Shown here one piece after another: positions 1 to 59,073 of a stretch of 64,000 nucleotides of DNA. Source of the DNA: Macrostomum lignano. Its lineage: Eukaryota. Under the pieces are notes generated by a model, which was not told where the DNA came from, made no database searches, and worked only from the letters and a program-made list of their open reading frames with translations. The translations under genes were made by a program, and so were the position numbers. The stretch lies in assembly GCA_002269645.1 (NCBI GenBank), contig NIVC01001864.1, positions 80,318-144,317 of the forward strand, written 5' to 3'. Position 1 is the stretch's first letter. Each line of letters begins with the position of its first letter.

Positions 1-32
1 TGCTTCTCCCCAGTTCAGAACTGTTAGAGCAG
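1..32 (+). CDS. ADIPOR: ADIPOR/PAQR membrane receptor, internal exon truncated by the window edge
   Basis: Reads ASPQFRTVRA then a phase-1 donor GTGCGC at 33; resembles FATPKHRQTRAG of ADIPOR1/2; the phase matches the next exon. Confidence 0.75.
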
Positions 33-189
33 GTGCGCAGTGAGCTGCTGGCTGGGGTTCCATTTGTGTCTTTGCTGTGGACTTAAAAAAATTATCAATA
101 AGATACAGGCAGATTGACTTCATGCCTGATAGACTGGTTAATGTATTGATTATTTGATCGAATTATTTGTTAGATTGCTTTTGTATTTC

Positions 190-277
190 ATTAATTGATT
201 GACTGATTAATTGATTGACTGACTAATTGATTAATTAATTGATTGATTAATTGGTTGATTGGTTGATTGATTGATTA

Positions 278-351
<74 letters not shown>

Positions 352-435
352 GATTGATTGATTGATTGATTGTTTGTTTGATTGATTGATTGATTGATTG
401 TTTGTTTGATTGATTGATTGATTGACTGATTGATT
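190..435. repeat. (GATT)n microsatellite in ADIPOR intron
   Basis: Direct inspection. Confidence 0.95.
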
Positions 436-489
436 AAACGTGCTAATTGAAGTTTCAACACCCACCCTCTCCCTCCGCGAACCTCTCAG

Positions 490-680
490 CATTTTTCGCC
501 GCATTTGGCCTCTTTGGCGTGGTGCCGGCTATGAACTCCGTGTGGCTGCACGGCTGGGACTTGGCCTTCGAGAAGAGCGTCTGCTGGTGCGCCATCATGG
601 CCGCCTGCTACCTGACCGGCGCTGGCCTCTACGCCAGCCGGATACCGGAGAGACTGTTTCCCGGAAAGTGCGACGTAGTG
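490..680 (+). CDS. ADIPOR: ADIPOR/PAQR, penultimate exon
   Basis: Acceptor CTCAG at 489; [14 protein letters not shown]...[24 protein letters not shown] matches the family motif GAGLYAARIPERFFPGKFD; donor GTGGGT at 681. Confidence 0.93.
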
Positions 681-712
681 GTGGGTTTTGTTAACATGTC
701 TGCTGCATGTCT

Positions 713-3135
<2,423 letters not shown>

Positions 3136-3158
3136 CCTGTCCCTCAACCCAATTTCAG

Positions 3159-3284
3159 TGCCAGAGCCACCAGCTGTTTCACATTTTCGTCCTGCTAGGC
3201 ATGGCCTCGCACTTTTACGGCTGCTGGCGCTTGGCCAGCTACGTCATAGCGACGGAGGTGAACACGGGCTGCGCCAGGGCGTAG
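3159..3284 (+). CDS. ADIPOR: ADIPOR/PAQR, last exon (absent from the ORF track)
   Basis: Acceptor TTTCAG at 3158, phase 0; [41 protein letters not shown]; retains the zinc-binding SHQxFH histidines; TAG at 3282-3284. Confidence 0.93.
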
Positions 3285-3834
3285 GAGTTTCTGCCAATTC
3301 CGAGGATCTCAGGCTCAGATTGACAGCCCAACTCTTTTTTTCGTTTTTTGTGTTTCATTTAAACTTTTCTTTTAGAGAAAGTTAACTTTCCTCATTCAAT
3401 TCCTTCGAACCAATTTTGCTCGCGAGTTGAGTTGATAATTTAGTTTCGCGCGCAAAACTGTTTTGTTTATTACAGCTAAATTATTCGCACCCGGAAATCC
3501 AGCCCGGAAGAAACTTTGTTTAGTTTTGCAACAAATCTCTCCAGAGCAAGTTTTGCAAGCTTCGCTTTCGGCACAGCTCTTTCTACGAATCTACACGGTT
3601 TTTTCTCTACCGTTTTTGCTCTACTAATAGTAGTATGACGAAGAGGATAAAATATAATTCACTTTGAAACAACTATTAGATTTAAGTTTTTTTCGAAGAT
3701 TTTTATTTGATTAACTACTGAATGTTTGACTTGTTATAAATGTATCGTATATTAGTTCCGTTTTGGCGCCAGTTCGAATTTGAAGCGATATTGGGCAGTG
3801 ATAGATCGGTGTTGAGTAGTTAGCTTTCAGGTCT

Positions 3835-4517
3835 TCATGCATGTCCCTCTCCCGGGCTCTTCTGCTCCTGCTTCTCGGCCTTCGGCTTTTGCCCATTCGG
3901 CTTCCCCAATTTGTTTCCTTTATTGTCTTTCGCGGCTGCCCGTTGTTGCCGCTTCTTGTTGGCCGACACCTTCACCAGCCGGGTCTCCATCTTCGCCAGC
4001 ACCAGTCGCCTTTCCTGCTCCTCCTTCTCCCTGAGCTGCTCCCGCTGCTCCCTCATTGTCGCCAGCTCCCAGCAGGCCTCTTCCAGCTGGCGCTGGCTCC
4101 ACTGCTCCAGCGCCTCCGCGTCCTCCCGCTTCGCCGCCCGACGCCGCCTCGCCTTCTCCTGGGCGATCGCCGCCCGGCGCAGCATCACCGCGGCCTCTTT
4201 CTCCGCCTCCTCCTTGGCCGCCTGTCGCTGCTTCTGCATCCCGGCTGCTATGCTGCTTCCGGCCAGCCGGCTGGCAATGATTTTGGAGCGAAGGATCCGC
4301 CACAGGCACCAGCCCACCAGCACAGGTGTGAGCAGGCAGTAGCCCATTGTGCAACTCAGCAGGCCGAAATTTCGCATGTAGCTGCTCAGACTGTCGGCGA
4401 GCACCAGCTCCAATTCGTGGGCGGAGAATTTGCCGAATTCCTCGATTGCTAGGTAGTCCAGTCGGCTGTAGCCAGTGACCTCACGGTGCGTTACGTTGCC
4501 GCGGTACCGGCTGCAGG
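3835..4517 (-). CDS. EGF/TSP1 membrane protein exon 7: stalk, TM segment and charged coiled-coil cytoplasmic tail
   Basis: Acceptor CCGCAG gives phase 1, matching exon 6; hydrophobic FGLLSCTMGYCLLTPVLVGWCLW followed by RILRSK; E/K/R/Q-rich tail; stop at 3835-3837. Confidence 0.75.
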
Positions 4518-4579
4518 CTGCGGGCGGCACGGCTGCTGTTCGAGTCCTTGGAGCCCACGCCCAAGCCTCGTCGGAGCCC

Positions 4580-7500
4580 CACTCCTGAAACTTGGGAGCC
4601 CCCTCCCCCACTCCCGGCCCTTGAAGCACCCTCCCCCACTCCCGGCCCATAGAGCCCCTTCCCCTACTCCCGACCCTTGGAGCCTCCTCCCATACTCCCG
4701 ACCCTTGGAGCCTCCTCCCCCACTCCCGGCCCATAGAGCCCCTTCCCCTACTCCCGACCCTTGGAGCCTCCTCCCATACTCCCGACCCTTGGAGCCTCCT
4801 CCCCCACTCCCGGCCCTTGGAGCCTTCTCCCCACTCCCGGCCCTTGGAGCACCCTCCCCCACTCCCGGCCCATAGAGCCCCTTCCCCTACTCCCGACCCT
4901 TGGAGCCTCCTCCCATACTCCCGACCCTTGGAGCCTCCTCCCCCACTCCCGGCCCTTGGAGCCTTCTCTCCACTCCCGGCCCTTGGAGCCCTCTCCCCAC
5001 TCCCGGCCCTTGGAGCCTTCTCCCCACTCCCGGCCCTTGGAGCCTTCTCCCCACTCCCGGCCCTTGGAGCCTTCTCCCCACTCCCGGCCCTTGGAGCCTT
5101 CTCCCCACTCCCGGCCCTTGGAGCCTTCTCCCCACTCCCGGCCCTTGGAGCCTTCTCCCCACTCCCGGCCCTTGGAGCCTTCTCCCCACTCCCGGCCCTT
5201 GGAGCCTTCTCTCCACTCCCGGCCCTTGGAGCCCTCTCCCCACTCCCGGCCCTTGGAACCCCCTCCCCACTCCCGGCCCTTGGAACCCCCTCGTCAACCC
5301 CCGGCCCTTGGAAACCCCTCCCCACTCCCGGCCCTTGGAACCCCCTGTCCCACTCCCGGGCCATAGGGCCCCTCCCCCACTTCTTGGAGCCCTCCGTCTC
5401 CTGACCCTTGGAGCCCCTCCCCACTCCCGGCCCATAGAGCCCCCTGTCCTACTCGCGGGCCATAAGGCCCCCTCCCCCTCCTGACCCTTGGAGCCCCCTC
5501 CCCCTCCTAACCCTTGGAGCCCCCTCCCCTCCTGACCCTTGGAGCCCCCTCCCCCTCCTAACCCTTGGAGCCCCCTCCCCCTCCTGACCCTTGGAGCCCC
5601 CTCCCCCTCCTGACCCTTGGAGCCCCTCCCCCTCCTGACCCTTGGAGCCCCCTCCCCCTCCTGACCCTTGGAGCCCCCTCCCCTCCTGACCCTTGGAGCC
5701 CCCTCCCCCTCCTAACCCTTGGAGCCCCCTCCCCCTCCTGACCCTTGGAGCCCCCTCCCCCTCCTGACCCTTGGAGCCCCCTCCCCTCCTAACCCTTGGA
5801 GCCCCCTCCCCCTCCTGACCCTTGGAGCCCCCTCCCCTCCTGACCCTTGGAGCCCCTCCCCCTCCTGACCCTTGGAGCCCCCTCCCCCTCCTGACCCTTG
5901 GAGCCCCTCCCCCTCCTAACCCTTGGAGCCCCCTCTCCCTCCTGACCCTTGGAGCCCCCTCCCCACTTCCGGCTCGTGGAACCCCCCACTCCCGGCCCTT
6001 GAAGTACCCTCCCCCACTCCCGGCCCTTGGAGTACCCTCCCCCACTCCCGGCCCTTGGAGTACCCTCCCCCACTCCCGGCCCTTGGAGTACCCTCCCCCA
6101 CTCCCGGCCCTTGGAGTACCCTCCCCCACTCCCGGCCCTTGAAGTACCCTCCCCCACTCCCGGCCCTTGGAGTACCCTCCCCACTCCCGGCCCTTGAAGT
6201 ACCCTCTCCCACTCCCGGCCCTTGGAGTACCCTCCCCACTCCCGGCCCTTGGAGTACCCTCCCCCACTCCCGGCCCTTGGAGTACCCTCCCCACTCCCGG
6301 CCCTTGGAGTACCCTCCCCACTCCCGGCCCTTGGAGTACCCTCCCCCACTCCCGGCCCTTGGAGTACCCTCCCCCACTCCCGGCCCTTGGAGTACCCTCC
6401 CCACTCCCGGCCCTTGGAGTACCCTCCCCACTCCCGGCCCTTGGAGTACCCTCCCCCACTCCCGGCCCTTGAAGTACCCTCCCCCACTCCCGGCCCTTGG
6501 AGTACCCTCCCCCACTCCCGGCCCTTGGAGTACCCTCCCCCACTCCCGGCCCTTGGAGTACCCTCCCCCACTCCCGGCCCTTGGAGTACCCTCCCCACTC
6601 CCGGCCCTTGAAGTACCCTCCCCCCACTCCCGGCCCTTGGAGTACCCTCCCCCACTCCCGGCCCTTGGAGTACCCTCCCCCACTCCCGGCCCTTGGAGTA
6701 CCCTCCCCCACTCCCGGCCCTTGGAGTACCCTCCCCCACTCCCGGCCCTTGGAGTACCCTCCCCCACTCCCGGCCCTTGAAGTACCCTCCCCACTCCCGG
6801 CCCTTGGAGTACCCTCCCCCACTCCCGGCCCTTGGAGTACCCTCCCCCACTCCCGGCCCTTGGAGTACCCTCCCCCACTCCCGGCCCTTGGAGTACCCTC
6901 CCCCACTCCCGGCCCTTGGAGTACCCTCCCCCACTCCCGGCCCTTGGAGTACCCTCCCCCCACTCCCGGCCCTTGGAGTACCCTCCCCCACTCCCGGCCC
7001 TTGAAGTACCCTCCCCCACTCCCGGCCCTTGGAGTACCCTCCCCCACTCCCGGCCCTTGGAGTACCCTCCCCACTCCCGGCCCTTGGAGTACCCTCCCCC
7101 ACTCCCGGCCCTTGGAGTACCCTCCCCCACTCCCGGCCCTTGAAGTACCCTCCCCCACTCCCGGCCCTTGGAGTACCCTCCCCCACTCCCGGCCCTTGGA
7201 GTACCCTCCCCCACTCCCGGCCCTTGGAGTACCCTCCCCCACTCCCGGCCCTTGGAGTACCCTCCCCCCACTCCCGGCCCTTGGAGTACCCTCCCCCACT
7301 CCCGGCCCTTGAAGTACCCTCCCCACTCCCGGCCCTTGGAGTACCCTCCCCCACTCCCGGCCCTTGGAGTACCCTCCCCACTCCCGGCCCTTGGAGTACC
7401 CTCCCCACTCCCGGCCCTTGGAGTACCCTCCCCACTCCGGCCCTTGGAGTACCCTCCCCCACTCCCGGCCCTTGGAGTACCCTCCCCCACTCCCGGCCCT

Positions 7501-7950
7501 TGGAGTACCCTCCCCCTCCCGGCCCTTGGAGTACCCTCCCCCACTCCCGGCCCTTGGAGTACCCTCCCCCACTCCCGGCCCTTGGAGTACCCTCCCCCAC
7601 TCCCGGCCCTTGGAGTACCCTCCCCCACTCCCGGCCCTTGAAGTACCCTCCCCCCACTCCCGGCCCTTGGAGTACCCTCCCCCCACTCCCGGCCCTTGGA
7701 GTACCCTCCCCCACTCCCGGCCCTTGGAGTACCCTCCCCCACTCCCGGCCCTTGGAGTACCCTCCCCCACTCCCGGCCCTTGGAGTACCCTCCCCCACTC
7801 CGGCCCTTGGAGTACCCTCCCCACTCCCGGCCCTTGGAGTACCCTCCCCCACTCCCGGCCCTTGGAGTACCCTCCCCCACTCCCGGCCCTTGAAGTACCC
7901 TCCCCCACTCCCGGCCCTTGGAGTACCCTCCCCCCACTCCCGGCCCTTAG
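4580..7950. repeat. ~26-28-bp C-rich minisatellite made of three variant blocks
   Basis: Units such as CCCCACTCCCGGCCCTTGGAGTACCCT; source of many spurious long ORFs. Confidence 0.95.
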
Positions 7951-8062
7951 AGCCCGCTTCCGACCCTTGGGGTTTGAAGTTCCCCTTTTGCAGAATCTCT
8001 AGAAAAAAACTACAGACTCATCTATAGACCAGATCTCATAGACCTAGCTCATCCAGTCTCAC

Positions 8063-8305
8063 CCATTGTGTCCCAGTTGTTCATCTGTCCTGGGCAGAGA
8101 AATCGAATCTCCCTCTTCGGGCCCTCGCAGTGCTGCGCAAATCCTTTGGATTCGCATCGTCTAATTCGAACTTGCATTGGCGATTCCATGCAGGCGAGCG
8201 CTTTGTCTGGCAGGATGCACTTGCTCCAGTCTTCCCAGCTGCTCCAGCTGGGCGGGTCGGGAGGGTATTCACATCTGGGACCGGAGTAGCCGTGCCGGCA
8301 TTTGC
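8063..8305 (-). CDS. EGF/TSP1 membrane protein exon 6: end of cbEGF plus TSP1 domain
   Basis: KCRHGYSGPRC completes the EGF module; WSSWEDWSKC...QVRIRRC...C is the TSP1 signature; AAG acceptor and GTGAGA donor, phases 1/1. Confidence 0.88.
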
Positions 8306-8399
8306 CTTGAGCGAGTGTTGAGTTCTTACTGTCAATTTTGGGCGCTTGGTACATCCGTATATTTTTCTACGGCATTTGGATTTCTAACCCAATCTCTCC

Positions 8400-8965
8400 A
8401 CCTTCTCTGAATCTCTCCATCTCTCTGAATCTCACCCCCTCTCTAAATCTCCCCTCTCTGAATCTCTCTCCCACTCTCTGAATCTCTCTCCCACTCTCTG
8501 AATCTCTCTCCCACTCTCTGAATCTCTCCCCTCTCTGGATCTCTCCCCTCTCTGAATCTCCCCTCTCTGAATCTCTCTCCCACTCTCTGAATCTCTCTCC
8601 CACTCTCTGAATCTCTCTCCCCCTCTCTGAATCTCTCCCCTCTCTGGATCTCTCCCCTCTCTGAATCTCTCCCCTCTCTGGATCTCTCCCCTCTCTGAAT
8701 CTCTCCCCTCTCTGGATCTCTCCCCTCTCTGAATCTCTCCCCTCTCTGGATCTCTCCCTCTCTGAATCTCTCCCCTCTCTGGATCTCTCCCCTCTCTGGA
8801 TCTCTCCCCTCTCTGAATCTCTCCCCTCTGTGAATCTCTCCCCTCTCTGAATCTCTCCCATCTCTGAATCAATCTCTCCCCTCTCTGGATCTCTCCCCGC
8901 TCTGAATCTCTCCCCGCTCTGAATCTCCCCTCTCTGAATCTCTTTCCTCGCTCGTTGAATCTCTC
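8400..8965. repeat. CT-rich ~20-bp minisatellite (CTCTCTGAATCTCTCCC)
   Basis: Direct inspection. Confidence 0.9.
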
Positions 8966-9055
8966 CCCCTCTCCAAGTCTCAAAGCATTTCAACACAAGC
9001 CAGTGTGCTAAGAGAAAAATACACCGCAAATGAATGAAAACGCAAAGCCGCTCAC

Positions 9056-9293
9056 AGATGAAGCCGGGATTATGATTCTCGCATTCGCCGTCGTTTTTAC
9101 ACAACGGATTTAGTTCGGGATTTCGTTCGCTGCACTCGTTGATGTCGCGGCAGCGCGGATCCTTCTCGGAGATGCGGACGTGCGTCTCCGGCGGGCAGAT
9201 GCAGGTGAAGCCGTGCTCAACGTCAGGATCGCGCTGGCAGATGTGATCGCCGCATGTGCTGGTGGATGCCTGGTTCTGGCAGACGTCATTCTC
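9056..9293 (-). CDS. EGF/TSP1 membrane protein exon 5: EGF2 plus start of calcium-binding EGF3
   Basis: ENDVC...CGDHIC...GFTCICPP...RCRDINEC...CKNDGECENHNPGFIC; DINEC and C-x-N-x4-F-x-C fit cbEGF; TACAG acceptor, GTGAGC donor. Confidence 0.88.
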
Positions 9294-9409
9294 CTGTACG
9301 GAAGAAGTCGGCTAATTGCAAGTCATAGTTCTCGCATCCTGACAGCAAACCATAGACTTGCTAGACCAGTCGATGGTTCCAAGAGCCCAAGGCTTAGAAG
9401 AAGTCATTT

Positions 9410-10395
9410 TCTCCTCTCTGAACCTCACCCCTTCTCTCCCCCTCTCTGAACATCACCCCTTCTCTCCCTCTCTCTGAACATCACCCCTTCTCTCTCCCCC
9501 TCTCTGAACCTCACCCCTTCTCTCTCCTCCTCTCTGAACCTCACCCCTTCTCTCTCCCCCTCTCTGAACCTCACCCCTTCTCTCCCCCTCCTCTCTGAAC
9601 CTCACCCCTTCTCTCTCCCCCTCTCTGAACCTCACCCCTTCTCTCCCCCTCTCTGAACCTCACCCCTTCTCTCCCCTCTCTGAACATCACCCCTTCTCTC
9701 TCCCCCTCTCTGAACCTCTCCCTTTCTCTCTCCCCCTCTCTGAACCTCACCCCTTCTCTCCCCTTCTCTCCCCCTCTCTGAACCTCACCCCTTCTCTCCC
9801 CCTCTCTGAACATCACCCCTTCTCTCTCCCCCTCTCTGAACCTCTCCCTTTCTCTCTCCCCCTCTCTGAACCTCACCCCTTCTCTCCCCTTCTCTCCCCC
9901 TCTCTGAACCTCACCCCTTCTCTCCCCTTCTCTCCCCCTCTCTGAACCTCACCCCTTCTCTCCCCTTCTCTCTCCCTCTCTGAACCTCACCCCTTCTCTC
10001 TCCCCATCTCTGAACCTCACCCCTTCTCTCTGAACTGCTAACTCTCTCTCTCCCTCTCTGAATCTCACCCCTTCTCTCTCTCTCTCCATCTCTGAACCTC
10101 ACCCCTTCTCTCTCTCTCCCTCTCTGAATCTCACCCCTTCTCTCTCTCTCCATCTCTGAATCTCACCCCTTCTCTCTCTCTCCCTCTCTGAATCTCACCC
10201 CTTCTCTCTCTCTCCATCTCTGAACCTCACCCCCTCTGTCTCCACCTCTCTGAACTGCTAACTCTCTCTCCCCCTCTGTCTCTACCTCTCTGAACTGCTA
10301 ACTCTCTCTCTCCCCCCTCTCTGAACCTCACCCCTTTCTCTCCCCCACTTTGAACTTTTCTCCTTCTCTTTCCCTCTCTCTGAATCTCTACCCCT
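9410..10395. repeat. CT-rich minisatellite (CTCTCTGAACCTCACCCCTT)
   Basis: Direct inspection; related to the 8400 array. Confidence 0.9.
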
Positions 10396-10701
10396 CTCCG
10401 AAGAATGGAAAGTTAACAACTGTCAACAATTAATGCCTTCTGACTCTCTAACGCTCTAGCTGTCAATCAGTGAGTCTCTGTGATATGGTTGCGAGTTGTT
10501 TACTTCTAGAATTGAATTTCATCACGGATATATCAATGGCATTCAAATAATGGCAATGGCTGGCGTTGGCATCCAACTCGCATCGTATTACGCTCGTAGA
10601 TGCCGGATGCCATTTCGGGCATCGCTGTTCCAACGCTAAGATGCCAGAGGTGATACTCAAAAAGCCGCACAAAAAGACAAGCCTTCGCCATTGCCTCTCA
10701 C

Positions 10702-10963
10702 CAGTTCGCACCGTTCGCCCCTCCACGCGGCCGAGCAGGTGCATAAAATCACGATCTCTTCGCTCGCCACTCCCAGCGCGTTTCGATTGGTCGATTTGCG
10801 CACGCTAGCCTGGCAGATGCCGCCGTTCAGGCAGACATTCTGTTCGTGACAGTAGCCCAGCAGCCGCTTCTGACACGACTCCCGCTCGGGGTCCCAATGA
10901 AAGCCCAGTGCGCAGATGCAGTTGCGCTTTGCCACCAGCTGCTTTTGCAGCTCCACAAGGCGT
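10702..10963 (-). CDS. EGF/TSP1 membrane protein exon 4: Cys-rich linker plus EGF1
   Basis: CICALGFHWDPERESC and CHEQNVCLNGGIC...CTCSAAWRGERC; TTCCAG acceptor (phase 2), GTGAGA donor (phase 0). Confidence 0.85.
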
Positions 10964-11136
10964 CTGGAAGAGAGTCATGGACGGGAAAATGCAAAAGAAG
11001 TCGTCAACGATCAAACACAAGCATCACTTTCATCCGAAAGACATGCGAAAGCTTTGCTTGCTCAGAATAACTTAGCATTGAGGATGTGAAAAATCTCAAA
11101 TATTCAGTATCGACGGCTTAAACAACTGAAACTGTC

Positions 11137-12210
11137 AGGGACTGAGGATGTGAGGGACTGAGGATGAGAGGGACTGAGGATGAGAGGGACTGAGGATGTG
11201 AGGGACTGAGGATGAGAGGGACTGAGGATGAGAGGGACTGAGGATGAGAGGGATTGAGGATGAGAGGGACTGAGGATGAGAGGGACTGAGGATGTGAGGG
11301 ATTGAGGATGAGAGGGACTGAGGATGAGAGGGACTGAGGATGAGAGGGATTGAGGATGAGAGGGACTGAGGATGAGAGGGATTGAGGATGAGAGGGATTG
11401 AGGATGCGAGGGACTGAGGATGTGAGGGACTGAGGATGAGAGGGACTGAGGATGAGAGGGACTGAGGATGAGAGGGATTGGGGATGAGAGGGATTGAGGA
11501 TGAGAGGGATTGAGGATGAGAGGGATTGAGGATGAGAGGGATTGAGGATGAGAGGGACTGAGGATGAGAGGGATAGAGGATGCGAGGGACTGAGGATGAG
11601 AGGGATAGAGGATGCGAGGGACTGAGGATGTGAGGGACTGAGGATGAGAGGGACTGAGGATGAGAGGGACTGAGGATGAGAGGGATTGAGGATGAGAGGG
11701 ATTGAGGATGAGAGGGATTGAGGATGAGAGGGATTGAGGATGAGAGGGATTGAGGATGAGAGGGACTGAGGATGAGAGGGATTGAGGATGAGAGGGATTG
11801 AGGATGAGAGGGATTGAGGATGAGAGGGATTGAGGATGAGAGGGACTGAGGATGTGAGGGATTGAGGATGTGAGGGACTGAGGATGTGAGGGACTGAGGA
11901 TGTGAGGGATTGAGGATGAGAGGGACTGAGGATGAGAGGGATTGAGGATGAGAGGGATTGGGGATGAGAGAGATTGAGGATGAGAGGGACTGAGGATGAG
12001 AGGGATTGAGGATGAGAGGGATTGAGGATGAGAGGGATTGAGGATGAGAGGGATTGAGGATGAGAGGGACTGAGGATGTGAGGGATTGAGGATGTGAGGG
12101 ACTGAGGATGTGAGGGACTGAGGATGTGAGGGATTGAGGATGAGAGGGACTGAGGATGTGAGGGACTGAGGATGAGAGGGACTGAGGATGTGAGGGACTG
12201 AGGGTGCGAG
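11137..12210. repeat. 16-bp minisatellite (ACTGAGGATGAGAGGG)
   Basis: Direct inspection. Confidence 0.95.
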
Positions 12211-12226
12211 GGATTCTGAGACTCAC

Positions 12227-12628
12227 AGGTGGAGCACAGCCCGAAACCGGAAGCAATGGTTCCTCTTGTGCACCGCCTCATCGTCGCGAAGGCATCCAGA
12301 GGCAAGGAATTTGACTTGCAACATCGCATACTGGTCGTCAATTGTCACCGGCTTCTCGTCCGGATCGTTCGCGAGCAGCTCTTTGATGATGAAGAGCACC
12401 AGCTTGTGGCTGCGCAGATTCTCATCGAAGATCTCCATGGGGATTCGCTTTTCCATAGGCAGTGTGCTGTGCCATTCGCGAAAGTCATCGATTTCTCGCG
12501 CGAAGGCCTGATATGTGATCTTGTCAACTTCTGCTTTTCGAAATGGGTGGTACTGTAGTTCGACCTCCAGCTCCGTGAAGCAGTTCACGTCCACGCCCAG
12601 CTTGATGTTCGCCACGTTTGAGCAGTTT
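12227..12628 (-). CDS. EGF/TSP1 membrane protein exon 3 (unrecognised extracellular domain)
   Basis: Open, non-repetitive frame between two arrays; CTCCAAG acceptor, GTGAGT donor; phases 2/2 match both neighbours. Confidence 0.8.
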
Positions 12629-12654
12629 CTTGGAGAAATGGGGATTAGCGACTA

Positions 12655-13185
12655 CGGCTACTGCTACAGTTACTATGGCTACTGTACCATGATTACTATG
12701 ACTACTATGACTACTATGACTACTATGACTACTATGAATACTATGACTACTATGACTACTATGAATACTATGACTACTATGAATACTATGACTACTGACT
12801 ATTATGACTACTATGACTACTATGACGACTATGACGACTATGACTACTATGAATACTATGACTACTATGACTACTATGATTATTATGATTACTATGACTA
12901 CTATGAATACTATGACTATTATGACTACTATGACTACTATGAATACTATGACTACCATGACTACTATGAATACTATGACTATTATGACTACTATGACTAC
13001 TATGAATACTATGACTATTATGACTACTATGACTACTATGAATACTATGACTACTGACTATTATGACTACTATGACTACTATGACGACTATGACTACTAT
13101 GAATACTATGACTACTATGACTACTATGATTATTATGATTACTATGACTACTTTGACTACTATCACTACTATCACTACACACTAA
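12655..13185. repeat. 9-bp repeat (GACTACTAT)
   Basis: Direct inspection. Confidence 0.95.
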
Positions 13186-13199
13186 CTACTGTGTCTTAC

Positions 13200-13477
13200 G
13201 TGACAACGGCTTCGTCAGCCAGGCAGTTAGACGGGCAGCTTTCTTTCATTTGATTTACGGCACACAGTCCCAGTCTGTACACCAGATCGATAAGGTCAAC
13301 GAGCTTTTTCTCTTCCTCCAGCACATTGGTGACAATAGTATCGTACAAGTTCCGTTCCGAGTGAAACTTGTAGACGCCGCACAACAGAATGTTCCACGGC
13401 GTAATGTACATCACGGATTCCGGCTTCTCCCTGTCAAGGCTGACTTTGTCAACCAGCAGGATGGCACCCAGCAATGC
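13200..13477 (-). CDS. EGF/TSP1 membrane protein exon 2
   Basis: CTCCAG acceptor after a 70-bp intron; ALLGAILLVDK...CPSNCLADEAVVT; GTAAGA donor, phase 2. Confidence 0.8.
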
Positions 13478-13547
13478 CTGGAGGTAGATTTGGTAGCTGA
13501 TGAAGCCACTACCTTGGTGACTGCATTTGTTTACAGCTACGGCTTAC

Positions 13548-13859
13548 CTGAACGCCGCTATTGCGAAAAATCCACTTCGGCAACAAGTTGTCGGTGCGCA
13601 GATTCGCTTTCGAATCCGTGTAGTCAACCCAGTCCTCCTGTTCATCGAATTTGAACATGGCGCTCAGCTTGCCCGAACTAAGCTCGGACACCTCCCTTCT
13701 GTGGCCGTTCTCGCCTCTGGCCGTGTGCGGCGCCCATCGGCACTGACGAAGATGGATGTAGATTGAATTTGAAGCTAAGAAATCTGACTGACCATTTACC
13801 GGAGCCGGCGTCACTGCTAGCAGTAATGAAACAGTCGAAACAGCCACGACAGTCAACAT
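13548..13859 (-). CDS. EGF/TSP1 membrane protein exon 1 with signal peptide
   Basis: ATG at 13859; hydrophobic leader MLTVVAVSTVSLLLAVTPAPVNG; GTAAGC donor, phase 0. The seven exons sum to 2418 nt (805 aa plus stop). Confidence 0.8.
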
Positions 13860-14827
13860 GCTGTAAATTGTGGAGAGCTACATGTACTTTTCAATGATTT
13901 TCTATAAGTTAAACTAACCTAAGGACGAATTAAACTTTAACAAAATGATTTTTAATAGATTCGAAAGTTCGAATGCAATTAAACTATGAGATGCAGAAGT
14001 GGATTATGTAACGCGTATTAGACTAACCTCCTAACCACAGACAAATTTTGGGGGATTTTCGTGCCTTTCCGTTCCTTTTTTATTCACCACAACGAGAATT
14101 CGCATGTCGTAGCCCAATGAGCTACATGTAAGACTGAGAGCCAATAGAGCCATGCAGTCATCCATGGAGCTATTAAAGCTGGAGCCAAAAAATCCCAAAG
14201 CCTCGGTCTTCTACTTTTCGACCATAGATAACTGCAACAGAAATCTCCACTATTTCAATTCTGAAACTGACAGCCTGTAACTAAAAATAGATTACATGCC
14301 AGCTGGTTTTTACATAATATAAATTTAGATTGATACTATAAAATACATGTACGAGAAAAAATGTATATTTGAACGTATAGAAGCACAAGTTATCGATTCA
14401 AAATGAAAGTAACTAGCTTTTTATAAACGTGCAACGGATAATTTAGTCTAATGTTATTTGCAGGCGCTTTTTATGGTCAAAACGTACGTAAAAGCCCGAA
14501 GTGATTTCTTTGTGGTATCCTTAAATCATTGTGTGTATTTTCCTTATTTGTTAATGCTAATGCTAGTCCTATGCTTAGCATCCCAGCTTTCGGGCAAAGA
14601 AAATTTGAGGACAAAAAGCCGATAAGAATGCATATTTATATTTGAAATTTAAAGATGTTCAATGATTTCAATGCAAGAACGTCTTAAGTAGAAGGACGTT
14701 ACACTCAGCTTTCGTGAAAATTTTTACATGACCTATTTTGACCGTAGAAATCCTTGTTTCTGTATGTATATATAAAACATGTAGATAGTGCATGGGATAA
14801 CTGTGATTTATTGATAGCACCACATCC

Positions 14828-15647
14828 CATAGGCGTAGGAACAGGGGGAAAAGTGTGGGGGGGACAGTAATGGTAATCTGGCCCCTCCACATTTTAAATG
14901 CAAAATGTAGACTTTTTATTTCTTTTTTACTCTTATTTTTGGTTTTTGCTGCTTTGCATGAATGCATTTTGCTGCAGAGCGACGAAACATAGCGCCTGCA
15001 GCGCTTAATGAGTACCTGCGCTGCCAAAATGCAATGAGTGCCTGCGGCGCTAAAATGAGTGCCTGCGCTGCCAAAATGAGTGCCTGCGCTGCCAAAATGA
15101 GTGCCTGCGGCGCTAAAATGAGTGCCTGCGCTGCCAAAATGAATGCCTGCGGCGCTAAAATGAGTGCCTGCGCTGCCAAAATGAGTGCCTGCGGCGCTAA
15201 AATGAGTGCCTGCGCTGCCAAAATGAGTGCCTGCGGCGCTAAAATGATCGAGTGCCTGCGCTGCCAAAATGAGTGCCTGCGCTGCCAAAATGAGTGCCTG
15301 CGGCGCTAAAATGAGTGCCTGCGCTGCCAAAATGAATGCCTGCGGCGCTAAAATGAGTGCCTGCGCTGCCAAAATGAGTGCCTGCGCTGCCAAAATGAGT
15401 GCCTGCGGCGCTAAAATGAATGCCTGCAGCGCTAAAATGAGTGCCTGCGGCGCTAAAATGATTGCCTGCAGCGCCAGAATGAGTGCTGACAACACCGATT
15501 CTGAAAACAATCGGTACATGATAAATGTGCATTTCCCATATAAAAAAATATAAAATCTAACTCGACGGGCCCGGGCGTGCGCCCCACATCCCCCTAAATC
15601 CGCAACTGAACCTGCAAACCACCTTTTGAAACGTTCCTACGCCTATG
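14828..15647. mobile_element. Non-autonomous TIR element (MITE) carrying an internal 21-bp minisatellite
   Basis: Perfect 15-bp inverted termini CATAGGCGTAGGAAC (14828-14842) and GTTCCTACGCCTATG (15633-15647); no convincing TSD (ccacatcc vs cctatgcc). Confidence 0.7.
15034..15480. repeat. 21-bp minisatellite inside the MITE (GAGTGCCTGCGCTGCCAAAAT)
   Basis: Direct inspection. Confidence 0.92.
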
Positions 15648-20162: not shown

Positions 20163-21891
20163 ATCGTAGTGGACACATTCTTCTCCAATCAGGCATCCGC
20201 ACCGGCCGAGTCTACATGGCCACAAGACTACATGGCCACTTTCCCTACTGAATATCGCCGAGCAATTAACGAGTTAATCTACTTTGAGGAAACATTTGCC
20301 CAGCAACTGCAGATTATTGGCCAGCTGTTTAAACAACCTCTAGTGGACCTGTGCCCCAGCTCGCCCGATGTTGACACCATATTTAGCGCATTATCAGCCA
20401 TCACCGAGTGTACAAACTTTCTCTACGTTGCTCTTGACGATAGTCGCAATATTACTGAGCACCCGCCAATCGGGCACTGCTTCTACGAGCTGTCCGAAGA
20501 GGGCCACTTTGACAGCTACGCCAAGTACGCCCAGGACGTATTGTCCGTCAAATGCCGCGATCGCCTATTCGAATTGTTGGGAAACAGTTTGGTTAAGGAG
20601 AAATTCGAAACAGTCGGCCGGGAGATCGAGCTGCAGGCGGCCGGGCACCTCAGCTATTATTCCCTTCTGTCTTCCTGCCCTGCCCCCGTGCCTCCGCCTG
20701 CGGCAGGGGCAGCTTCCAAGAAGAACTCCGACGCAGATGGATCTTCGGCTCAGAATCATCTCAATTTTTATTCACATCATCATCATCATCAGGTGTCGGA
20801 TTCTGTATCAGCTGCCTCCTCGACGGCTACTCTGACTTCCCTGTCAACTGCAACTACATGCGCTTCGAGTTCAGCCTCGCCAGCCGGCTTGGAGCAGGGC
20901 GAAGAGCTCCGGGCCGTGATGCTGCTGGCCTGCCGGTATCTGCTGCCGAAACTGCTGCTAGTGCCAGTTTATCACTTCTTGTACTACGACAGGATATTGG
21001 AGAGATTTGAACAGTTGCAAGAGAAGAATATGTGGCATTGTAGAAACGGCTCGTCCACTGCTAGGTCTGCTTCTTCTGGTGGAGCGGAATTAGAGTCTGC
21101 CGACGATGCAGATGCGGCTAGCCAGCAGCAGCCATCCTTGTGCGGCAGTCCAGTCACCAGCGGGTATAATGCCGATAGGCGTCGATCCTCATCGTCCCTA
21201 CCTGTTGAGGTGTGCAGCGACGATCGGGACACTATAGTGCAGACCAGATCCATCCTAGTGTCCACTAGTCATCGGGTTAAACGGACACTTGACGAGTTTG
21301 AGCGTCGGCCGGTGCCAGCAGCGACCGTCTCGCCTGCTTCCCTTCCTGGCGTCGGTAGCAACGGCGACGACTCCGTGTCGCTAAGCGTCAGTCCGACTGG
21401 CGGCTCCGACATTGAAGAATCGGCGTCTGTTGTTGCAGCAGCGGCGGCTTCAGGTGCGGCCAGTCGGATGTCTAACCAGCAGCAGCGCTCTGTGCTGTTG
21501 AATCCGCTGGCCTCCAGGCTGTTCTTTCACGCATCGATGAGCGCGCCAGACTCCATGCACACGGACCGGGCCTGCAGTAAGAAACTCGCCCAGCTGCGCT
21601 CAATGACCCGGTCGGCGCCGGAGCTCGATCTGGCCAAGCCGCGCTGTACAATCTTCTACAAGGAGGGCACCCTGTACCAGATGGAACGGGCCGGCCGGTT
21701 TCAAGAGCGCCGAGTCTATCTGTTTAATAATCGATTGTTTGTGATGAAGGCTAGCAAAACACTGCCGCTGCGCAGTATTAATGAAGAATATCGATTGAAG
21801 CGGGTTGTGTTCCTTCTGCAGCATCGCTTCGTGCTGGTTGACCATCCGAAGCCTGTGACCAAGCCTGCCGCGGCTGGAGGCACAGAAGAGG
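20163..21891 (+). CDS. SOS: SOS exon 2 (DH domain and most of PH)
   Basis: HPPIGHCFYELSEEGHFDSYAKYAQDVL, RYLLPKLLLVPVYHFLYY, FYKEGTL...ERRVYLF, EYRLK match the SOS DH-PH; CTGCAG acceptor, GTTCGT donor phase 1. Confidence 0.93.
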
Positions 21892-21924
21892 GTTCGTGTT
21901 CTTGTCCTTTATTATTGCGTCACT

Positions 21925-23682
21925 GTCCGTCTGGTGATCTGGTCCCTGTCACTTAACTGTCCGTCTGGTGATCTGGTCCCTGTCACTTAACTGTCTGTCT
22001 GGTGATCTGGTCCCTGTCACTGAACTGTGTCTGGTGATCTGGTCCCTGTCACTGAACTGTCTGTCTGGTGATCTGTTCCCTGTCACTGAACTGTCTGTCT
22101 GGTGATCTGGTCCCTGTCACTTAACTGTCTGTCTGGTGATCTGGTCCCTGTCACTGAACTGTCCGTCTGGTGATCTGGTCCCTGTCACTGAACTGTCTGT
22201 CTGGTGATCTGGTCCCTGTCACTGAACTGTCTGTCTGGTGATCTGTTCCCTGTCACTGAACTGTCTGTCTGGTGATCTGGTCCCTGTCACTTAACTGTCT
22301 GTCTGGTGATCTGGTCCCTGTCACTTAACTGTCTGTCTGGTGATCTGGTCCCTGTCACTGAACTGTCCGTCTGGTGATCTGGTCCCTGTCACTTAACTGT
22401 CCGTCTGGTGATCTGGTCCCTGTCACTTAACTGTCTGTCTGGTGATCTGGTCCCTGTCACTGAACTGTGTCTGGTGATCTGGTCCCTGTCACTGAACTGT
22501 CTGTCTGGTGATCTGTTCCCTGTCACTGAACTGTCTGTCTGGTGATCTGGTCCCTGTCACTTAACTGTCTGTCTGGTGATCTGGTCCCTGTCACTTAACT
22601 GTCTGTCTGGTGATCTGGTCCCTGTCACTGAACTGTGTCTGGTGATCTGGTCCCTGTCACTGAACTGTCTGTCTGGTGATCTGTTCCCTGTCACTGAACT
22701 GTCTGTCTGGTGATCTGGTCCCTGTCACTTAACTGTCTGTCTGGTGATCTGGTCCCTGTCACTGAACTGTCCGTCTGGTGATCTGGTCCCTGTCACTGAA
22801 CTGTCTGTCTGGTGATCTGGTCCCTGTCACTGAACTGTCTGTCTGGTGATCTGGTCCCTGTCACTTAACTGTCTGTCTGGTGATCTGGTCCCTGTCACTT
22901 AACTGTCTGTCTGGTGATCTGGTCCCTGTCACTTAACTGTCTGTCTGGTGATCTGGTCCCTGTCACTGAACTGTCCGTCTGGTGATCTGGTCCCTGTCAC
23001 TGAACTGTCTGTCTGGTGATCTGGTCCCTGTCACTGAACTGTCTGTCTGGTGATCTGGTCCCTGTCACTTAACTGTCTGTCTGGTGATCTGGTCCCTGTC
23101 ACTGAACTGTCTGTCTGGTGATCTGGTCCCTGTCACTTAACTGTCTGTCTGGTGATCTGGTCCCTGTCACTGAACTGTCTGTCTGGTGATCTGGTCCCTG
23201 TCACTGAACTGTGTCTGGTGATCTGGTCCCTGTCACTTAACTGTCTGTCTGATGATCTGGTCCCTGTCACTTAACTGTCTGTCTGGTGATCTGGTCCCTG
23301 TCACTGAACTGTGTCTGGTGATCTGGTCCCTGTCACTGAACTGTCTGTCTGGTGATCTGTTCCCTGTCACTGAACTGTCTGTCTGGTGATCTGGTCCCTG
23401 TCACTTAACTGTCTGTCTGGTGATCTGGTCCCTGTCACTGAACTGTCCGTCTGGTGATCTGGTCCCTGTCACTGAACTGTCTGTCTGGTGATCTGGTCCC
23501 TGTCACTGAACTGTCTGTCTGGTGATCTGGTCCCTGTCACTTAACTGTCTGTCTGGTGATCTGGTCCCTGTCACTGAACTGTCTGTCTGGTAATCTGATC
23601 CCTGTCACTGAACTGTCTGTCTGGTGATCTGGTCCCTGTCACTGAACTGTCTGTCTGGTGTTCTGGTCCCTGTCACTTAACT
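21925..23682. repeat. 34-bp minisatellite in SOS intron 2
   Basis: Unit CTGTCTGTCTGGTGATCTGGTCCCTGTCACT(G/T)AA. Confidence 0.97.
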
Positions 23683-57570: not shown

Positions 57571-59073
57571 TCAGGTTACAGTCAGGTAACACTCAGGTAG
57601 ACCGGCGATTCTGACAGCCCACAGCCAGGGCTTTCCGGCTCGAGTCGCCGGTGTCGGACGATGCGAAATCGTGCTGCGGCTTCGGCTTCTGCTTTGGCCC
57701 GGGGTTCCGGTTGTACAGCAGGTCCATCTCCACCGGGTCGCCGTCCCAGTGCCGGCTGCCGCCGCTGGCCCGACCGCCAATTCCGGCATCTTCGTCTCCG
57801 CCCATGCCGGCGATGGCCGCCCGCCGCCGCCTCCGTCACCGCCGACGCCTCCGCCGCCGACTCTGCCTCCGCCAGCGCCGCCTCCGCCTCCGCCTCCGCC
57901 GCCGATGGCGCCGCCGCCGCGCCGTCGGGCCTGGCAGGCGCAGATGATGAGGGCCAGGGAGCGCCTGAACTTGCCATTGAGCCAGGCGTAGATGATCGGA
58001 TTGTACCAGATGTTGCTCATGGCCACCCAGTAGCAGATCGCGTGAGCCAGGATTTCCGTGTGACCCTGGCTGACCGGCCGCCAGTTGCTAGAAATGACAT
58101 ACAGGTGGATCGGCGACCAGGAGATGAAGAATAGCAGCATGACAACCACCAGCATCACGATGGTCTTCTTGCGTGTCACGATGCGCATGCCGTGTGCGGC
58201 GCCGTTATTAGCCGCCGCCTCGCCGTTCTGGTTGCCGGCGCCGCCCAGGACGGACTTGGCAATCCACAGGGTGTGGATGATGCGGGCGTAGATGAGCACA
58301 ATGAAAGCCAGGGGCAGCACGTATTGAGTGAGGAAGCTGATGCAGCTCAGGCTCAGCCGGATGATGGACTTGTCGAGCGGCATGAAGGCGCAGACTGTGG
58401 TGTCCTGCGTCTTGTAGACTCGCTGCACTTGATTAGTTGAGCTGTGCGGGAACAGCACCCGGCAGTTGAGCAGGCCCAGCAGCACGGAGGCCACCCAGCA
58501 AGCTGCAATCATCAGCTTGACTGCTCGCTTGGTGAATCGCGGTTTCAACGGCGACACGATGACGCGGTAGCGATCAACGGCAATGCACACCAGGGTGAAG
58601 CTGCTGACGCTGATGCACAGGCTGTTGGCAAAATAGGCCATTGTGCAGATAGCGTTGCCCAGGTTCCAGTTGTCAAAGAAGACAAACAGCTTCAACAAGT
58701 TGATGGGGATGGCCACGCAGGCCAGGATGATCTGCGCCACCGACAGGTTCAGCAGGAAAATGTTTGTCACGGTGCGCAGGCTGCGGCGCCGGTAGAGCAC
58801 GCAGCAGACCAGAGAATTGCCAATAAGCGACGCGATCGCCATGACAACTATCACCACGGCGATGATATCCAGCAACGCGCCTAGTTGCTCTTTTAATAGG
58901 CGTAGAAAATGCTTGCTCTCCTGGTCGAGAACTTTGTCGTACATCTTTGTGGAATTCCCGTACGAAGACTTGTTAATGTGAGTCTTCAGCTTGTCAAGGT
59001 TGTGATGCAACTGGTCCACCTGCATATCCCTTGTCGGGGAATGCGAGACTAAACTGGCCACGAGGTCCAACAT
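57571..59073 (-). CDS. Class A neuropeptide GPCR (NPY/RYamide/luqin/tachykinin-like), intronless
   Basis: Seven hydrophobic helices; GN (TM1), WNLGNAIC, DRY.VIVSPLKPR, SWSP, AMSNIWYNPIIY; ATG at 59073 chosen as the first plausible Met; tail probably frameshifted. Confidence 0.93.
   Translation of the reverse strand: MLDLVASLVSHSPTRDMQVDQLHHNLDKLKTHINKSSYGNSTKMYDKVLDQESKHFLRLLKEQLGALLDIIAVVIVVMAIASLIGNSLVCCVLYRRRSLRTVTNIFLLNLSVAQIILACVAIPINLLKLFVFFDNWNLGNAICTMAYFANSLCISVSSFTLVCIAVDRYRVIVSPLKPRFTKRAVKLMIAACWVASVLLGLLNCRVLFPHSSTNQVQRVYKTQDTTVCAFMPLDKSIIRLSLSCISFLTQYVLPLAFIVLIYARIIHTLWIAKSVLGGAGNQNGEAAANNGAAHGMRIVTRKKTIVMLVVVMLLFFISWSPIHLYVISSNWRPVSQGHTEILAHAICYWVAMSNIWYNPIIYAWLNGKFRRSLALIICACQARRRGGGAIGGGGGGGGGAGGGRVGGGGVGGDGGGGGRPSPAWAETKMPELAVGPAAAAGTGTATRWRWTCCTTGTPGQSRSRSRSTISHRPTPATRAGKPWLWAVRIAGLPECYLTVT

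What the first reader, a model, noticed from the sequence alone, without database searches (positions are those of the whole stretch)
3835..13859. Hidden 805-aa cell-surface protein: unrecognised N-terminal domain, 3 EGF, TSP1, TM and coiled tail
Seen: seven exons, separated by six introns of which five are filled by tandem arrays, join with canonical GT/AG sites and matching phases (0,2,2,0,1,1) into one uninterrupted 2418-nt frame. It carries a signal peptide, about 330 aa of Cys-containing sequence I cannot assign to any known domain, a CxCxxGxxWxxxxxxC linker, EGF, EGF, cbEGF, TSP1, one TM segment and a ~155-aa charged tail. Knowledge: EGF+TSP1 single-pass proteins act in adhesion, gamete interaction or signalling, but I do not recognise this architecture. 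Inference: a lineage-restricted (possibly flatworm) receptor or adhesion family with a new extracellular fold.
Basis: partly seen in the sequence, partly recalled or inferred. Interest (0 to 1): 0.72.

Follow-up and report, generated by a model that had tools for sequence, protein, structure and literature searches.

The report
Annotated orphan flatworm EGF-TSP1 membrane protein
The seven-exon gene is real and encodes a single-pass surface protein of the flatworm Macrostomum lignano, but GenBank already annotates it with the same exon joins as a hypothetical protein, and its roughly 320-residue N-terminal domain has no detectable relative, which is common in this worm.

Summary
Seven minus-strand exons (13859-3835) with GT/AG introns in phases 0,2,2,0,1,1 give a 2418-nt frame and an 805-aa protein.

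The window is part of Macrostomum lignano contig NIVC01001864.1. The protein is 100% identical to GenBank PAA63186.1 (BOX15_Mlig019802g1, "hypothetical protein") and the gene span is the same. It is therefore not hidden.

At least three further near-identical copies exist in the assembly. Two full-length copies differ from the window copy at 15 synonymous and 2 non-synonymous sites, so the frame is under constraint.

Confirmed features:
- A signal-peptide-like N-terminus and one transmembrane segment.
- EGF modules; the third is a Notch-type calcium-binding EGF (E 6e-8).
- A TSP1 repeat resembling properdin (E 1.7e-5; below Pfam's cut-off).
- A 155-aa charged tail with no heptad signal.

The N-terminal domain (aa 24-345) matched nothing outside M. 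lignano in Pfam, PDB or 1.84 billion representative proteins. AlphaFold without an alignment failed (pLDDT 32), so a "new fold" is untested.

Between 35 and 44% of M. lignano genes are Macrostomum-specific, and tandem arrays cover 45% of the window. The finding is an ordinary lineage-restricted mosaic surface protein, most likely an adhesion or recognition receptor.

The parts
13548..13859 (-). Exon 1 (aa 1-104): start codon at 13859, signal-peptide-like segment aa 1-23, and the start of the unassigned N-terminal domain
   Evidence: model; hydropathy 2.0 over aa 1-19. Identical to PAA63186.1.
13200..13477 (-). Exon 2 (aa 105-197): N-terminal domain
   Evidence: The acceptor is CTACCTCCAG|GCA at 13477. 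This exon is 100% identical in copies L001 and L002.
12227..12628 (-). Exon 3 (aa 197-331): N-terminal domain
   Evidence: No Pfam or PDB match.
10702..10963 (-). Exon 4 (aa 331-418): short helix, the CxCxxGFxWx6C half-module (aa 346-361) and EGF-like module 1 (aa 369-416, with a long C3-C4 insert)
   Evidence: RANK_CRD_2 scores 25.1 bits, below its cut-off of 26.8. Pfam EGF stretches.
9056..9293 (-). Exon 5 (aa 419-498): EGF-like module 2 (aa 423-466) and the first part of cbEGF module 3
8063..8305 (-). Exon 6 (aa 498-579): end of cbEGF 3 (aa 468-509) and the TSP1 repeat (aa 516-580)
   Evidence: Notch cbEGF E 5.9e-8. Properdin TSR E 1.7e-5. Motifs.
3835..4517 (-). Exon 7 (aa 579-805 plus stop): 46-aa juxtamembrane stretch, TM segment aa ~629-650, and a 155-aa charged cytoplasmic tail
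4518..8062 (-). Intron 6: 95% tandem array of a 28-bp unit, about 122 copies. The sense strand is 53% G and holds 95 G-quadruplex motifs.
   Evidence: The same intron is 1091 nt in L001 and 1224 nt in L002.
8306..13199 (-). Span that holds introns 2-5 (12629-13199, 10964-12226, 9294-10701, 8306-9055), with 9-, 16-, about 30- and 17-bp tandem arrays. Exons 3-5 lie between them.
13478..13547 (-). Intron 1: 70 nt, no repeat, GTAAGC...CTCCAG
   Evidence: Same length and splice sites in L001 and L002.
3702..3707 (-). AATAAA, a candidate polyadenylation signal 128 nt after the stop codon
   Evidence: This is a sequence motif only.

Best explanation
This is the annotated Macrostomum lignano gene BOX15_Mlig019802g1. 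It encodes a lineage-restricted type I (single-pass) membrane glycoprotein.

Shown:
- A seven-exon frame that is kept under purifying selection across the copies.
- A cleavable-looking signal peptide.
- An ectodomain made of an orphan domain of about 320 aa with 9 Cys, a three-Cys half-module, two divergent EGF modules, one Notch-type calcium-binding EGF and one properdin-like thrombospondin type 1 repeat.
- One transmembrane helix and a 155-aa basic A/E/R/K/Q-rich cytoplasmic tail.

Inferred:
- The EGF-cbEGF-TSR stretch forms a disulfide-rich stalk, stiffened by Ca2+, that holds the orphan domain away from the membrane as the ligand-binding head.
- The TSR adds a glycan or matrix-binding surface.
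- The charged tail links to cytoplasmic partners.
- On this reading the protein acts as a cell-cell or cell-matrix adhesion or recognition receptor.

Which tissue and which ligand are unknown.
For: - Gene model: the frame, splice sites and phases reproduce. The protein is identical to GenBank PAA63186.1 with the same gene span. That annotation was derived from RNA-seq (PMC5730564).
- Constraint: two other full-length copies differ from the window CDS at 15 synonymous and 2 non-synonymous sites. With 537 synonymous and 1878 non-synonymous sites, dN/dS is about 0.04. Flanks and introns are only 88-97% identical, against 97.5-100% per exon.
- Topology: there are only two hydrophobic segments, aa 1-22 and 629-650, with RILRSK directly after the second.
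- Modules: Pfam EGF scores 34.6 bits with 3 stretches. The cbEGF motifs are present and match Notch at E 5.9e-8. WSSWEDW plus six Cys match a properdin TSR at E 1.7e-5.
- Function: EGF and TSR modules on single-pass proteins are typical of adhesion and recognition proteins. This last point is established knowledge, not tested here.
Against: - There is no functional or expression evidence. Searches for Mlig019802 in the full text of the held library and in the supplements held for four papers found nothing; a fifth paper had no supplements held.
- The N-terminal domain has an odd number of Cys (9) and no recognisable binding fold, so its role as a ligand-binding head is pure inference.
- The TSP1 call fails Pfam's curated cut-off (9.8 bits against 21.6).
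- Signal-peptide cleavage was judged by hydropathy and the -3/-1 rule only.
- No known sorting or signalling motif was found in the tail.
Confidence: 0.6

Rival explanations
1. The protein is a membrane-anchored precursor of a shed ligand. It is cleaved in the 46-aa juxtamembrane stretch, and the released EGF/TSR ectodomain acts as a soluble signal or matrix component, as with EGF-family ligand precursors.
For: EGF modules lie on a single-pass protein, and a 46-aa cysteine-free juxtamembrane segment (aa 581-626) could hold a sheddase site.
Against: The EGF modules are Notch-like structural or cbEGF types, not receptor-ligand types by best match. They are separated from the membrane by a TSR. 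The only R-x-K/R-R motifs are one inside the TSR (RIRR, aa 544) and one in the tail (RRRR, aa 702); none is in the juxtamembrane stretch. Nothing tested here addresses shedding.
Confidence: 0.15
2. The N-terminal 320 aa are a fast-evolved version of a known extracellular domain, not a new fold. The protein would then be a diverged orthologue of a conserved metazoan receptor.
For: M. lignano proteins often lack detectable homologues: 35-44.5% of its genes are Macrostomum-specific by BLAST (PMC5816591). Sequence methods miss remote homology.
Against: An exhaustive phmmer search of 1.84 billion representatives found only M. lignano models. Pfam at E<=10, on the whole domain and in fragments, gave only chance-level hits, and PDB sequence searches found nothing. 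The EGF-TSR-TM half also finds no orthologue.
Confidence: 0.5
3. The frame is an annotation artefact, or a decaying duplicate with no function.
For: It is an orphan gene in a repeat-rich, recently duplicated genome. Several public models of it are fragmentary or mis-joined (P0002-P0005).
Against: Substitutions between copies run 15 synonymous to 2 non-synonymous. All 12 splice sites and the full frame are intact in three copies. The EGF and TSR cysteine frameworks are intact. The annotation is transcript-based.
Confidence: 0.03
4. The protein is a membrane-tethered MACPF-type pore former. The order of a large domain, then EGF, then TSP1 recalls complement C6-C9.
For: Only the domain order and the size of the N-terminal region (about 320 aa) point this way. 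The Pfam hit to EGF_C8A_B_C6 is at E 3.2, which is chance level.
Against: There is no Pfam MACPF hit at E<=10 and no PDB MACPF hit. The signature [YW]G[TS]H[FY]x6GG is absent, and so is even the relaxed G[TS]H[FYW].
Confidence: 0.02

Closest known systems
Notch-type calcium-binding EGF modules (for example Notch1/2 EGF11-13)
   Same: aa 468-509 carry D-I-N-E-C, six Cys, the C-x-N-x4-F-x-C hydroxylation consensus and the ending GYSGPRCE. phmmer gives E 5.9e-8 to Notch2 (5mwb_A).
   Different: Only one such module is present, preceded by two divergent EGFs with long inserts. There are no O-fucose or O-glucose consensus sites. Nothing else in the protein resembles Notch.
Properdin thrombospondin type 1 repeats (TSR; Pfam TSP_1 / TSP1_CFP_C)
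   Same: The WSSWEDW tryptophan ladder, the R-x-R layer (RIRRC) and six Cys are present. E 1.7e-5 to the properdin repeat at residues 316-369 of chain 9u62_P.
   Different: The protein has a single repeat on a membrane protein. It lacks the CSVTCG-type motif and the O-fucose site. It scores below Pfam's gathering cut-off.
Thrombospondins (TSP-1 to TSP-5)
   Same: They combine TSRs and EGF modules in one extracellular protein.
   Different: Thrombospondins are secreted oligomers with TSPN, vWC, type 3 repeats and a C-terminal domain, and their order is TSR then EGF. Here the order is EGF then TSR, the protein has a TM anchor, and none of the other thrombospondin domains was detected by Pfam.
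THSD1-like single-TSR type I membrane proteins (recalled from memory; a lead only)
   Same: The layout is signal peptide, about 300 aa of unassigned ectodomain, one TSR, TM and a cytoplasmic tail.
   Different: THSD1 has no EGF modules. No non-Macrostomum protein matched the N-terminal domain in the exhaustive search, so there is no evidence of homology.
M. lignano adhesive proteins Mlig-ap1 / Mlig-ap2
   Same: They come from the same species and are extracellular proteins that use EGF or TSP-1 modules (PMC8621496).
   Different: These are very large secreted, repeat-rich glue proteins with vWD, TIL, C8 and lectin domains. This gene encodes an 805-aa membrane protein with none of those domains.

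Membership tests
EGF-like domain (Pfam PF00008) | Six-cysteine EGF framework scoring above Pfam's gathering cut-off | tested here: met
   26.4 bits on the whole protein and 34.6 bits with 3 stretches on the EGF segment, against a cut-off of 21.5. Cys spacing.
Calcium-binding EGF (Pfam PF07645) | N-terminal D/N-x-D/N-E/Q-C plus the C-x-D/N-x4-F/Y-x-C consensus | tested here: met
   DINEC at aa 468 and CENHNPGFIC at aa 489. Notch cbEGF E 5.9e-8.
Calcium-binding EGF (Pfam PF07645) | Score above the curated Pfam cut-off (27 bits) | tested here: not met
   19.7 to 22.0 bits.
Thrombospondin type 1 repeat (Pfam PF00090) | W-x-x-W-x-x-W ladder, arginine layer and six conserved Cys | tested here: met
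   WSSWEDW at aa 518, RIRRC, and Cys at 527, 536, 548, 557, 568 and 580. Properdin TSR E 1.7e-5.
Thrombospondin type 1 repeat (Pfam PF00090) | Score above the curated Pfam cut-off (21.6 bits) | tested here: not met
   TSP_1 scores 9.8 bits, E 1.2. TSP1_CFP_C scores 15.0 bits against a cut-off of 27.
Thrombospondin family proper | Type 3 calcium-binding repeats and the C-terminal domain; a secreted oligomer | tested here: not met
   No such Pfam hits at E<=1. A TM segment is present.
MACPF / complement C6-C9-like | MACPF domain with the signature [YW]-G-[TS]-H-[FY]-x6-G-G | tested here: not met
   The signature and its relaxed core are absent. There are no Pfam or PDB hits.
Adhesion-GPCR-type GAIN/GPS domain | GPS motif C-x-C-x-H-L-S/T next to the first TM | tested here: not met
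   The motif is absent. There is no Pfam hit. The domain is N-terminal and not next to the membrane.
TNFR-type cysteine-rich domain (RANK_CRD_2) | Score above the Pfam cut-off (26.8 bits) for the CxCxxGxxWx6C segment | tested here: not met
   18.4 to 25.1 bits depending on the fragment. The segment also fits the C4-C5-C6 half of an EGF.
Type I single-pass membrane protein | N-terminal signal peptide, one internal hydrophobic helix and positive residues on the cytoplasmic side | tested here: met
   Kyte-Doolittle values above 1.5 occur only at aa 1-22 and 629-650, and RILRSK follows the second segment. No dedicated predictor was available.
Coiled-coil tail | Heptad periodicity of hydrophobic residues | tested here: not met
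   The best 28-aa window has 4 of 8 a/d positions hydrophobic, and 441 of 500 shuffles reach this. This is a crude test; COILS or Marcoil was not available.
Any known family for the N-terminal domain (aa 24-345) | Significant sequence match to a protein outside M. lignano, a Pfam model or a solved structure | tested here: not met
Any known fold for the N-terminal domain | A confident 3D model with a structural neighbour | not testable with these tools
   AF2 without an alignment gave pLDDT 32.4. No alignment depth is obtainable and no AFDB library was on hand.

The most novel reading that the evidence does not exclude
The 320-residue N-terminal domain is a new extracellular fold that arose within Macrostomum or the macrostomorph flatworms. 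It would serve as the ligand-binding head of a species-specific recognition receptor, for example in gamete or partner recognition in this hermaphrodite.
Probability: 0.15. Interest if true: 0.45.

Novelty: new member of a known kind. Interest (0 to 1): 0.22.

Why it matters
The importance is modest. The gene adds one uncharacterised, apparently Macrostomum-restricted surface protein to a genome in which a third or more of the genes are equally restricted (PMC5816591).

Its value lies in being a clean, constrained, full-length example of an orphan ectodomain grafted onto standard EGF and TSR modules. M. lignano has RNAi, in situ hybridisation and transgenesis, so the function of such lineage-specific surface proteins can be tested directly. 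A genus-wide alignment would show whether the domain is a new fold.

For the scan, the main result is a correction: the gene is not hidden, and the tandem arrays in its introns are a genome-wide feature.

Tried and rejected
1. My first attempt at junction 1 paired donor 13548 with nearby acceptors (13520, 13512, 13508, 13496). With that donor none kept the frame; in-frame joins needed weaker donors.
2. Word-indexed homologue searches with the full protein, the N-terminal domain and the EGF-TSR-TM part returned only M. lignano models. P0002-P0005 turned out to be fragmentary or mis-joined models of the same gene, one of them labelled 'Transposase', and not divergent paralogues.
3. The exhaustive phmmer search of the N-terminal domain against 1.84 billion representatives returned the same two M. 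lignano models only.
4. Pfam at E<=10, on the whole N-terminal domain and on fragments, gave only chance-level hits: Alginate_exp and Phage_XkdX.
5. PDB sequence searches of the N-terminal domain gave nothing usable; 3hrp at E 1.3 is chance.
6. AlphaFold2 without an alignment gave pLDDT 32.4 on the N-terminal domain and 35.6 on the EGF-TSR part. I therefore did not run Foldseek, because matches to such models are meaningless.
7. A metagenome scan with the exon-3 peptide found no relative.
8. I looked for expression data by searching for Mlig019802 in the full text of the library and in five M. lignano papers. The supplements held for four gave no occurrence, and the fifth had none held.
9. tblastn of the protein against the window found no second copy, and self-BLAST of the N-terminal domain found no internal repeat.
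10. The MACPF, GAIN/GPS, metalloprotease (HExxH), serine hydrolase (GxSxG) and RGD ideas were dropped because the motifs are absent.
I reached the same record through cluster member P0007.

Full report
**Observation**

The finding lies on the minus strand.

- The exons are 13859-13548, 13477-13200, 12628-12227, 10963-10702, 9293-9056, 8305-8063 and 4517-3835.
- All six introns are GT..AG, with donors GTAAGC, GTAAGA, GTGAGT, GTGAGA, GTGAGC and GTGAGA.
- The phases are 0,2,2,0,1,1.
- The introns measure 70, 571, 1263, 1408, 750 and 3545 nt.
- The joined frame is 2418 nt with a single terminal stop, giving 805 aa.

My first try at junction 1 used acceptors that were too close and failed. The real acceptor is CTACCTCCAG at 13477.

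Introns 2-6 are 70-95% tandem array, with units of 9, 16, about 30, 17 and 28 bp. No exon base lies in an array.

**Identity of the locus**

The protein search returned Macrostomum lignano proteins only. Cluster member P0007 is GenBank PAA63186.1, 'hypothetical protein BOX15_Mlig019802g1', which UniProt names 'EGF-like domain-containing protein'. It is identical to the window model over all 805 residues.

Its gene spans 10,025 bp on contig NIVC01001864.1 of assembly GCA_002269645.1 (Mlig_3_7). The locus fetched around it (L003) is identical to the reverse complement of window 1-23859. The window is therefore a piece of that contig, and the gene is already annotated with the same ends and joins. 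It is not hidden.

The Mlig_3_7 annotation was built from RNA-seq assemblies and experimentally mapped transcript ends (PMC5730564). The joins therefore very probably rest on transcript evidence, although I could not inspect reads.

**Copies and constraint**

Two further full-length copies (g2 and g3, protein P0001) lie on contigs NIVC01004463.1 and NIVC01003666.1. A fourth copy, cut by the contig end, sits at the start of NIVC01001864.1 itself. This fits the recent polyploidy and assembly redundancy described for this species (PMC5730564, PMC10733133).

The loci are collinear with the window from position 1 to about 21.9 kb. Exons are 97.5-100% identical, while introns and flanks are about 88-97% identical.

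Across the three full-length CDSs there are 15 synonymous and 2 non-synonymous differences (M255V and Q769L). With 537 synonymous and 1878 non-synonymous sites, dN/dS is about 0.04. All splice sites are conserved. The frame is a real coding sequence under constraint.

Intron lengths differ through array copy number. Intron 6 is 3545 nt in the window but 1091 and 1224 nt in the other copies. Part of that difference could be assembly collapse.

**Anatomy of the protein**

Hydropathy shows only two hydrophobic segments, aa 1-22 and aa 629-650.

- The first segment is followed by PVNG|Q, which fits the -3/-1 rule for signal-peptide cleavage. This is an inference.
- The second is followed by RILRSK, which gives type I topology.

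The parts of the protein, in order:

| Residues | Feature |
|---|---|
| 24-345 | Unassigned domain with 9 Cys and one N-glycosylation sequon |
| 346-361 | CICALGFHWDPERESC |
| 369-416 | Divergent EGF module 1, with a long insert |
| 423-466 | Divergent EGF module 2, with a long insert |
| 468-509 | Calcium-binding EGF |
| 516-580 | TSP1 repeat |
| 581-626 | Cysteine-free juxtamembrane stretch with one sequon |
| ~629-650 | Transmembrane segment |
| 651-805 | Cytoplasmic tail |

Supporting detail for each part:

- **aa 346-361.** This segment looks like the C4-C5-C6 half of an EGF, or like a TNFR-type half-module. RANK_CRD_2 scores 18.4-25.1 bits depending on the fragment, below its cut-off of 26.8.
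- **EGF modules.** Pfam EGF is above its cut-off, with three stretches.
- **cbEGF.** It carries DINEC and CENHNPGFIC and matches Notch2 and Notch1 cbEGFs at E down to 5.9e-8.
- **TSP1 repeat.** It has WSSWEDW, RIRRC and six Cys, and matches a properdin TSR at E 1.7e-5 in the PDB sequence search. It fails Pfam's curated cut-off (TSP_1 9.8 bits; TSP1_CFP_C 15 bits).
- **Tail.** It is 66% A/E/R/K/Q with net charge +16. A simple heptad test gave no signal beyond shuffles, with 441 of 500 shuffles doing as well. 'Charged tail' stands; 'coiled' is unsupported.

**The N-terminal domain**

Every sequence route came back empty.

- The word-indexed search of 5.8 billion clusters found only M. lignano models.
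- The exhaustive phmmer search of 1.84 billion representatives found only two M. lignano models.
- Pfam at E<=10, whole and in three fragments, gave chance hits only.
- PDB sequence searches found nothing.
- A metagenome scan with the exon-3 peptide found nothing.
- The domain has no internal repeat, and the window holds no second copy.

The UniProt entries that looked like 50-60% paralogues (P0003 and P0005) are mis-joined models of the same gene.

AlphaFold2 without an alignment gave pLDDT 32.4. The EGF-TSR part also failed, at 35.6. I did not run Foldseek on either model. Whether the domain is a new fold or a diverged known one cannot be decided here.

I checked specific ideas by motif. MACPF was suggested by the order large domain, EGF, TSP1, as in complement C6-C9. 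I also checked GAIN/GPS, zinc protease and serine hydrolase. None of these motifs is present.

**Most likely mechanism**

What is shown is a constrained type I membrane protein whose ectodomain ends in standard disulfide-rich modules.

What I infer is this:

- The EGF-EGF-cbEGF-TSR segment is a semi-rigid, Ca2+-stabilised stalk.
- The TSR contributes a glycan or matrix-binding face.
- The orphan domain at the membrane-distal end is the specific binding head.
- The basic tail engages cytoplasmic partners.

On this reading the protein is a cell-adhesion or recognition receptor (confidence about 0.6).

A shed-ligand precursor is the main functional rival (0.15). An artefact or dead gene is very unlikely (0.03).

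No expression data could be retrieved. Searches for the gene ID found nothing in the text library, nothing in the supplements held for four M. lignano papers, and a fifth paper had none held.

**Comparison with what is known, and novelty**

The modules belong to well-known families: Notch-type cbEGF and properdin-type TSR. The protein is not a thrombospondin. It has no type 3 repeats or C-terminal domain, it is membrane-anchored, and its modules are in the reverse order. It is also unrelated to the large secreted Mlig-ap adhesives, which use EGF or TSP-1 modules too (PMC8621496). THSD1 has a similar layout by memory, but no homology was detected.

Being an orphan is normal in this species: 35-44.5% of M. 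lignano genes are Macrostomum-specific (PMC5816591).

Repeat-filled introns are also normal. Simple and tandem repeats make up 15% of the genome (PMC5730564), and arrays cover 45% of this window.

**Verdict**

I file this as a new, uncharacterised member of a known kind, the EGF/TSR mosaic surface proteins. The gene is already annotated, and interest is low to moderate.

The only potentially novel element is the fold of the N-terminal domain. A genus-wide alignment plus structure prediction would settle that.

Noticed in passing
window 4518-8062 (intron 6, sense = minus strand): The 28-bp array (about 122 units) puts four G-runs per unit on the sense strand. That gives 95 canonical G-quadruplex motifs on the sense strand and none on the antisense strand. 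The intron is 3545 nt here but 1091 and 1224 nt in the other gene copies.
   Followed up: partly
window 1-64000: Tandem arrays (TRF score >=50) cover 45% of the window, with dozens of unrelated units of 4-57 bp. Introns 3-6 of the gene show strong purine/pyrimidine strand asymmetry.
   Followed up: partly
L004 374-7250 (NIVC01001864.1 1-10250); L001; L002: At least four near-identical copies of the gene exist in assembly Mlig_3_7. One is cut by the start of the same contig that holds the window and is annotated under a different name (Mlig010270g1, 679 aa).
   Followed up: partly
window 13743-13799 (minus strand, inside exon 1): A GTAAAT...CGTCAG stretch of 57 nt, in frame, could be spliced as an extra intron. 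That would remove aa 21-39 around the predicted signal-peptide cleavage site. The annotation retains it.
   Followed up: no
window 13860-13869 (minus strand): The start codon is preceded by AATTTACAG|C, an acceptor-like site 1 nt upstream. This could be a spliced-leader trans-splice site; 38.8% of M. lignano genes are trans-spliced (PMC5730564).
   Followed up: no
window 1-3284 (+ strand): The downstream, convergent neighbour is annotated as a 292-aa HlyIII/PAQR-family protein. The 2.4-kb (AGAC)n array at 723-3131 lies within its span.
   Followed up: no
window 20169-21956 (+ strand) and beyond: A long open exon has a RhoGEF domain (E 2.6e-9). The corresponding gene in copy L002 encodes a 1561-aa RhoGEF/RasGEF protein and is transcribed divergently from the finding.
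   Followed up: partly
window 57571-59166 (minus strand): An uninterrupted 531-aa ORF has a full rhodopsin-family 7TM domain (7tm_1, E 2e-47). It is probably an intronless GPCR gene.
   Followed up: no
P0002, P0003, P0004, P0005 (UniProt A0A1I8F4I3, A0A1I8FL19, A0A1I8ITW9, A0A1I8FG11): Older public models of this gene are fragmentary, frame-shifted or mis-joined, and one is named 'Transposase'. They mimic divergent paralogues in search tables.
   Followed up: yes
window 14668-15519 (minus strand): A 283-aa ATG ORF overlaps a 21-bp tandem array (15033-15486) and has no Pfam match. It is probably a repeat-generated ORF and not a gene.
   Followed up: no
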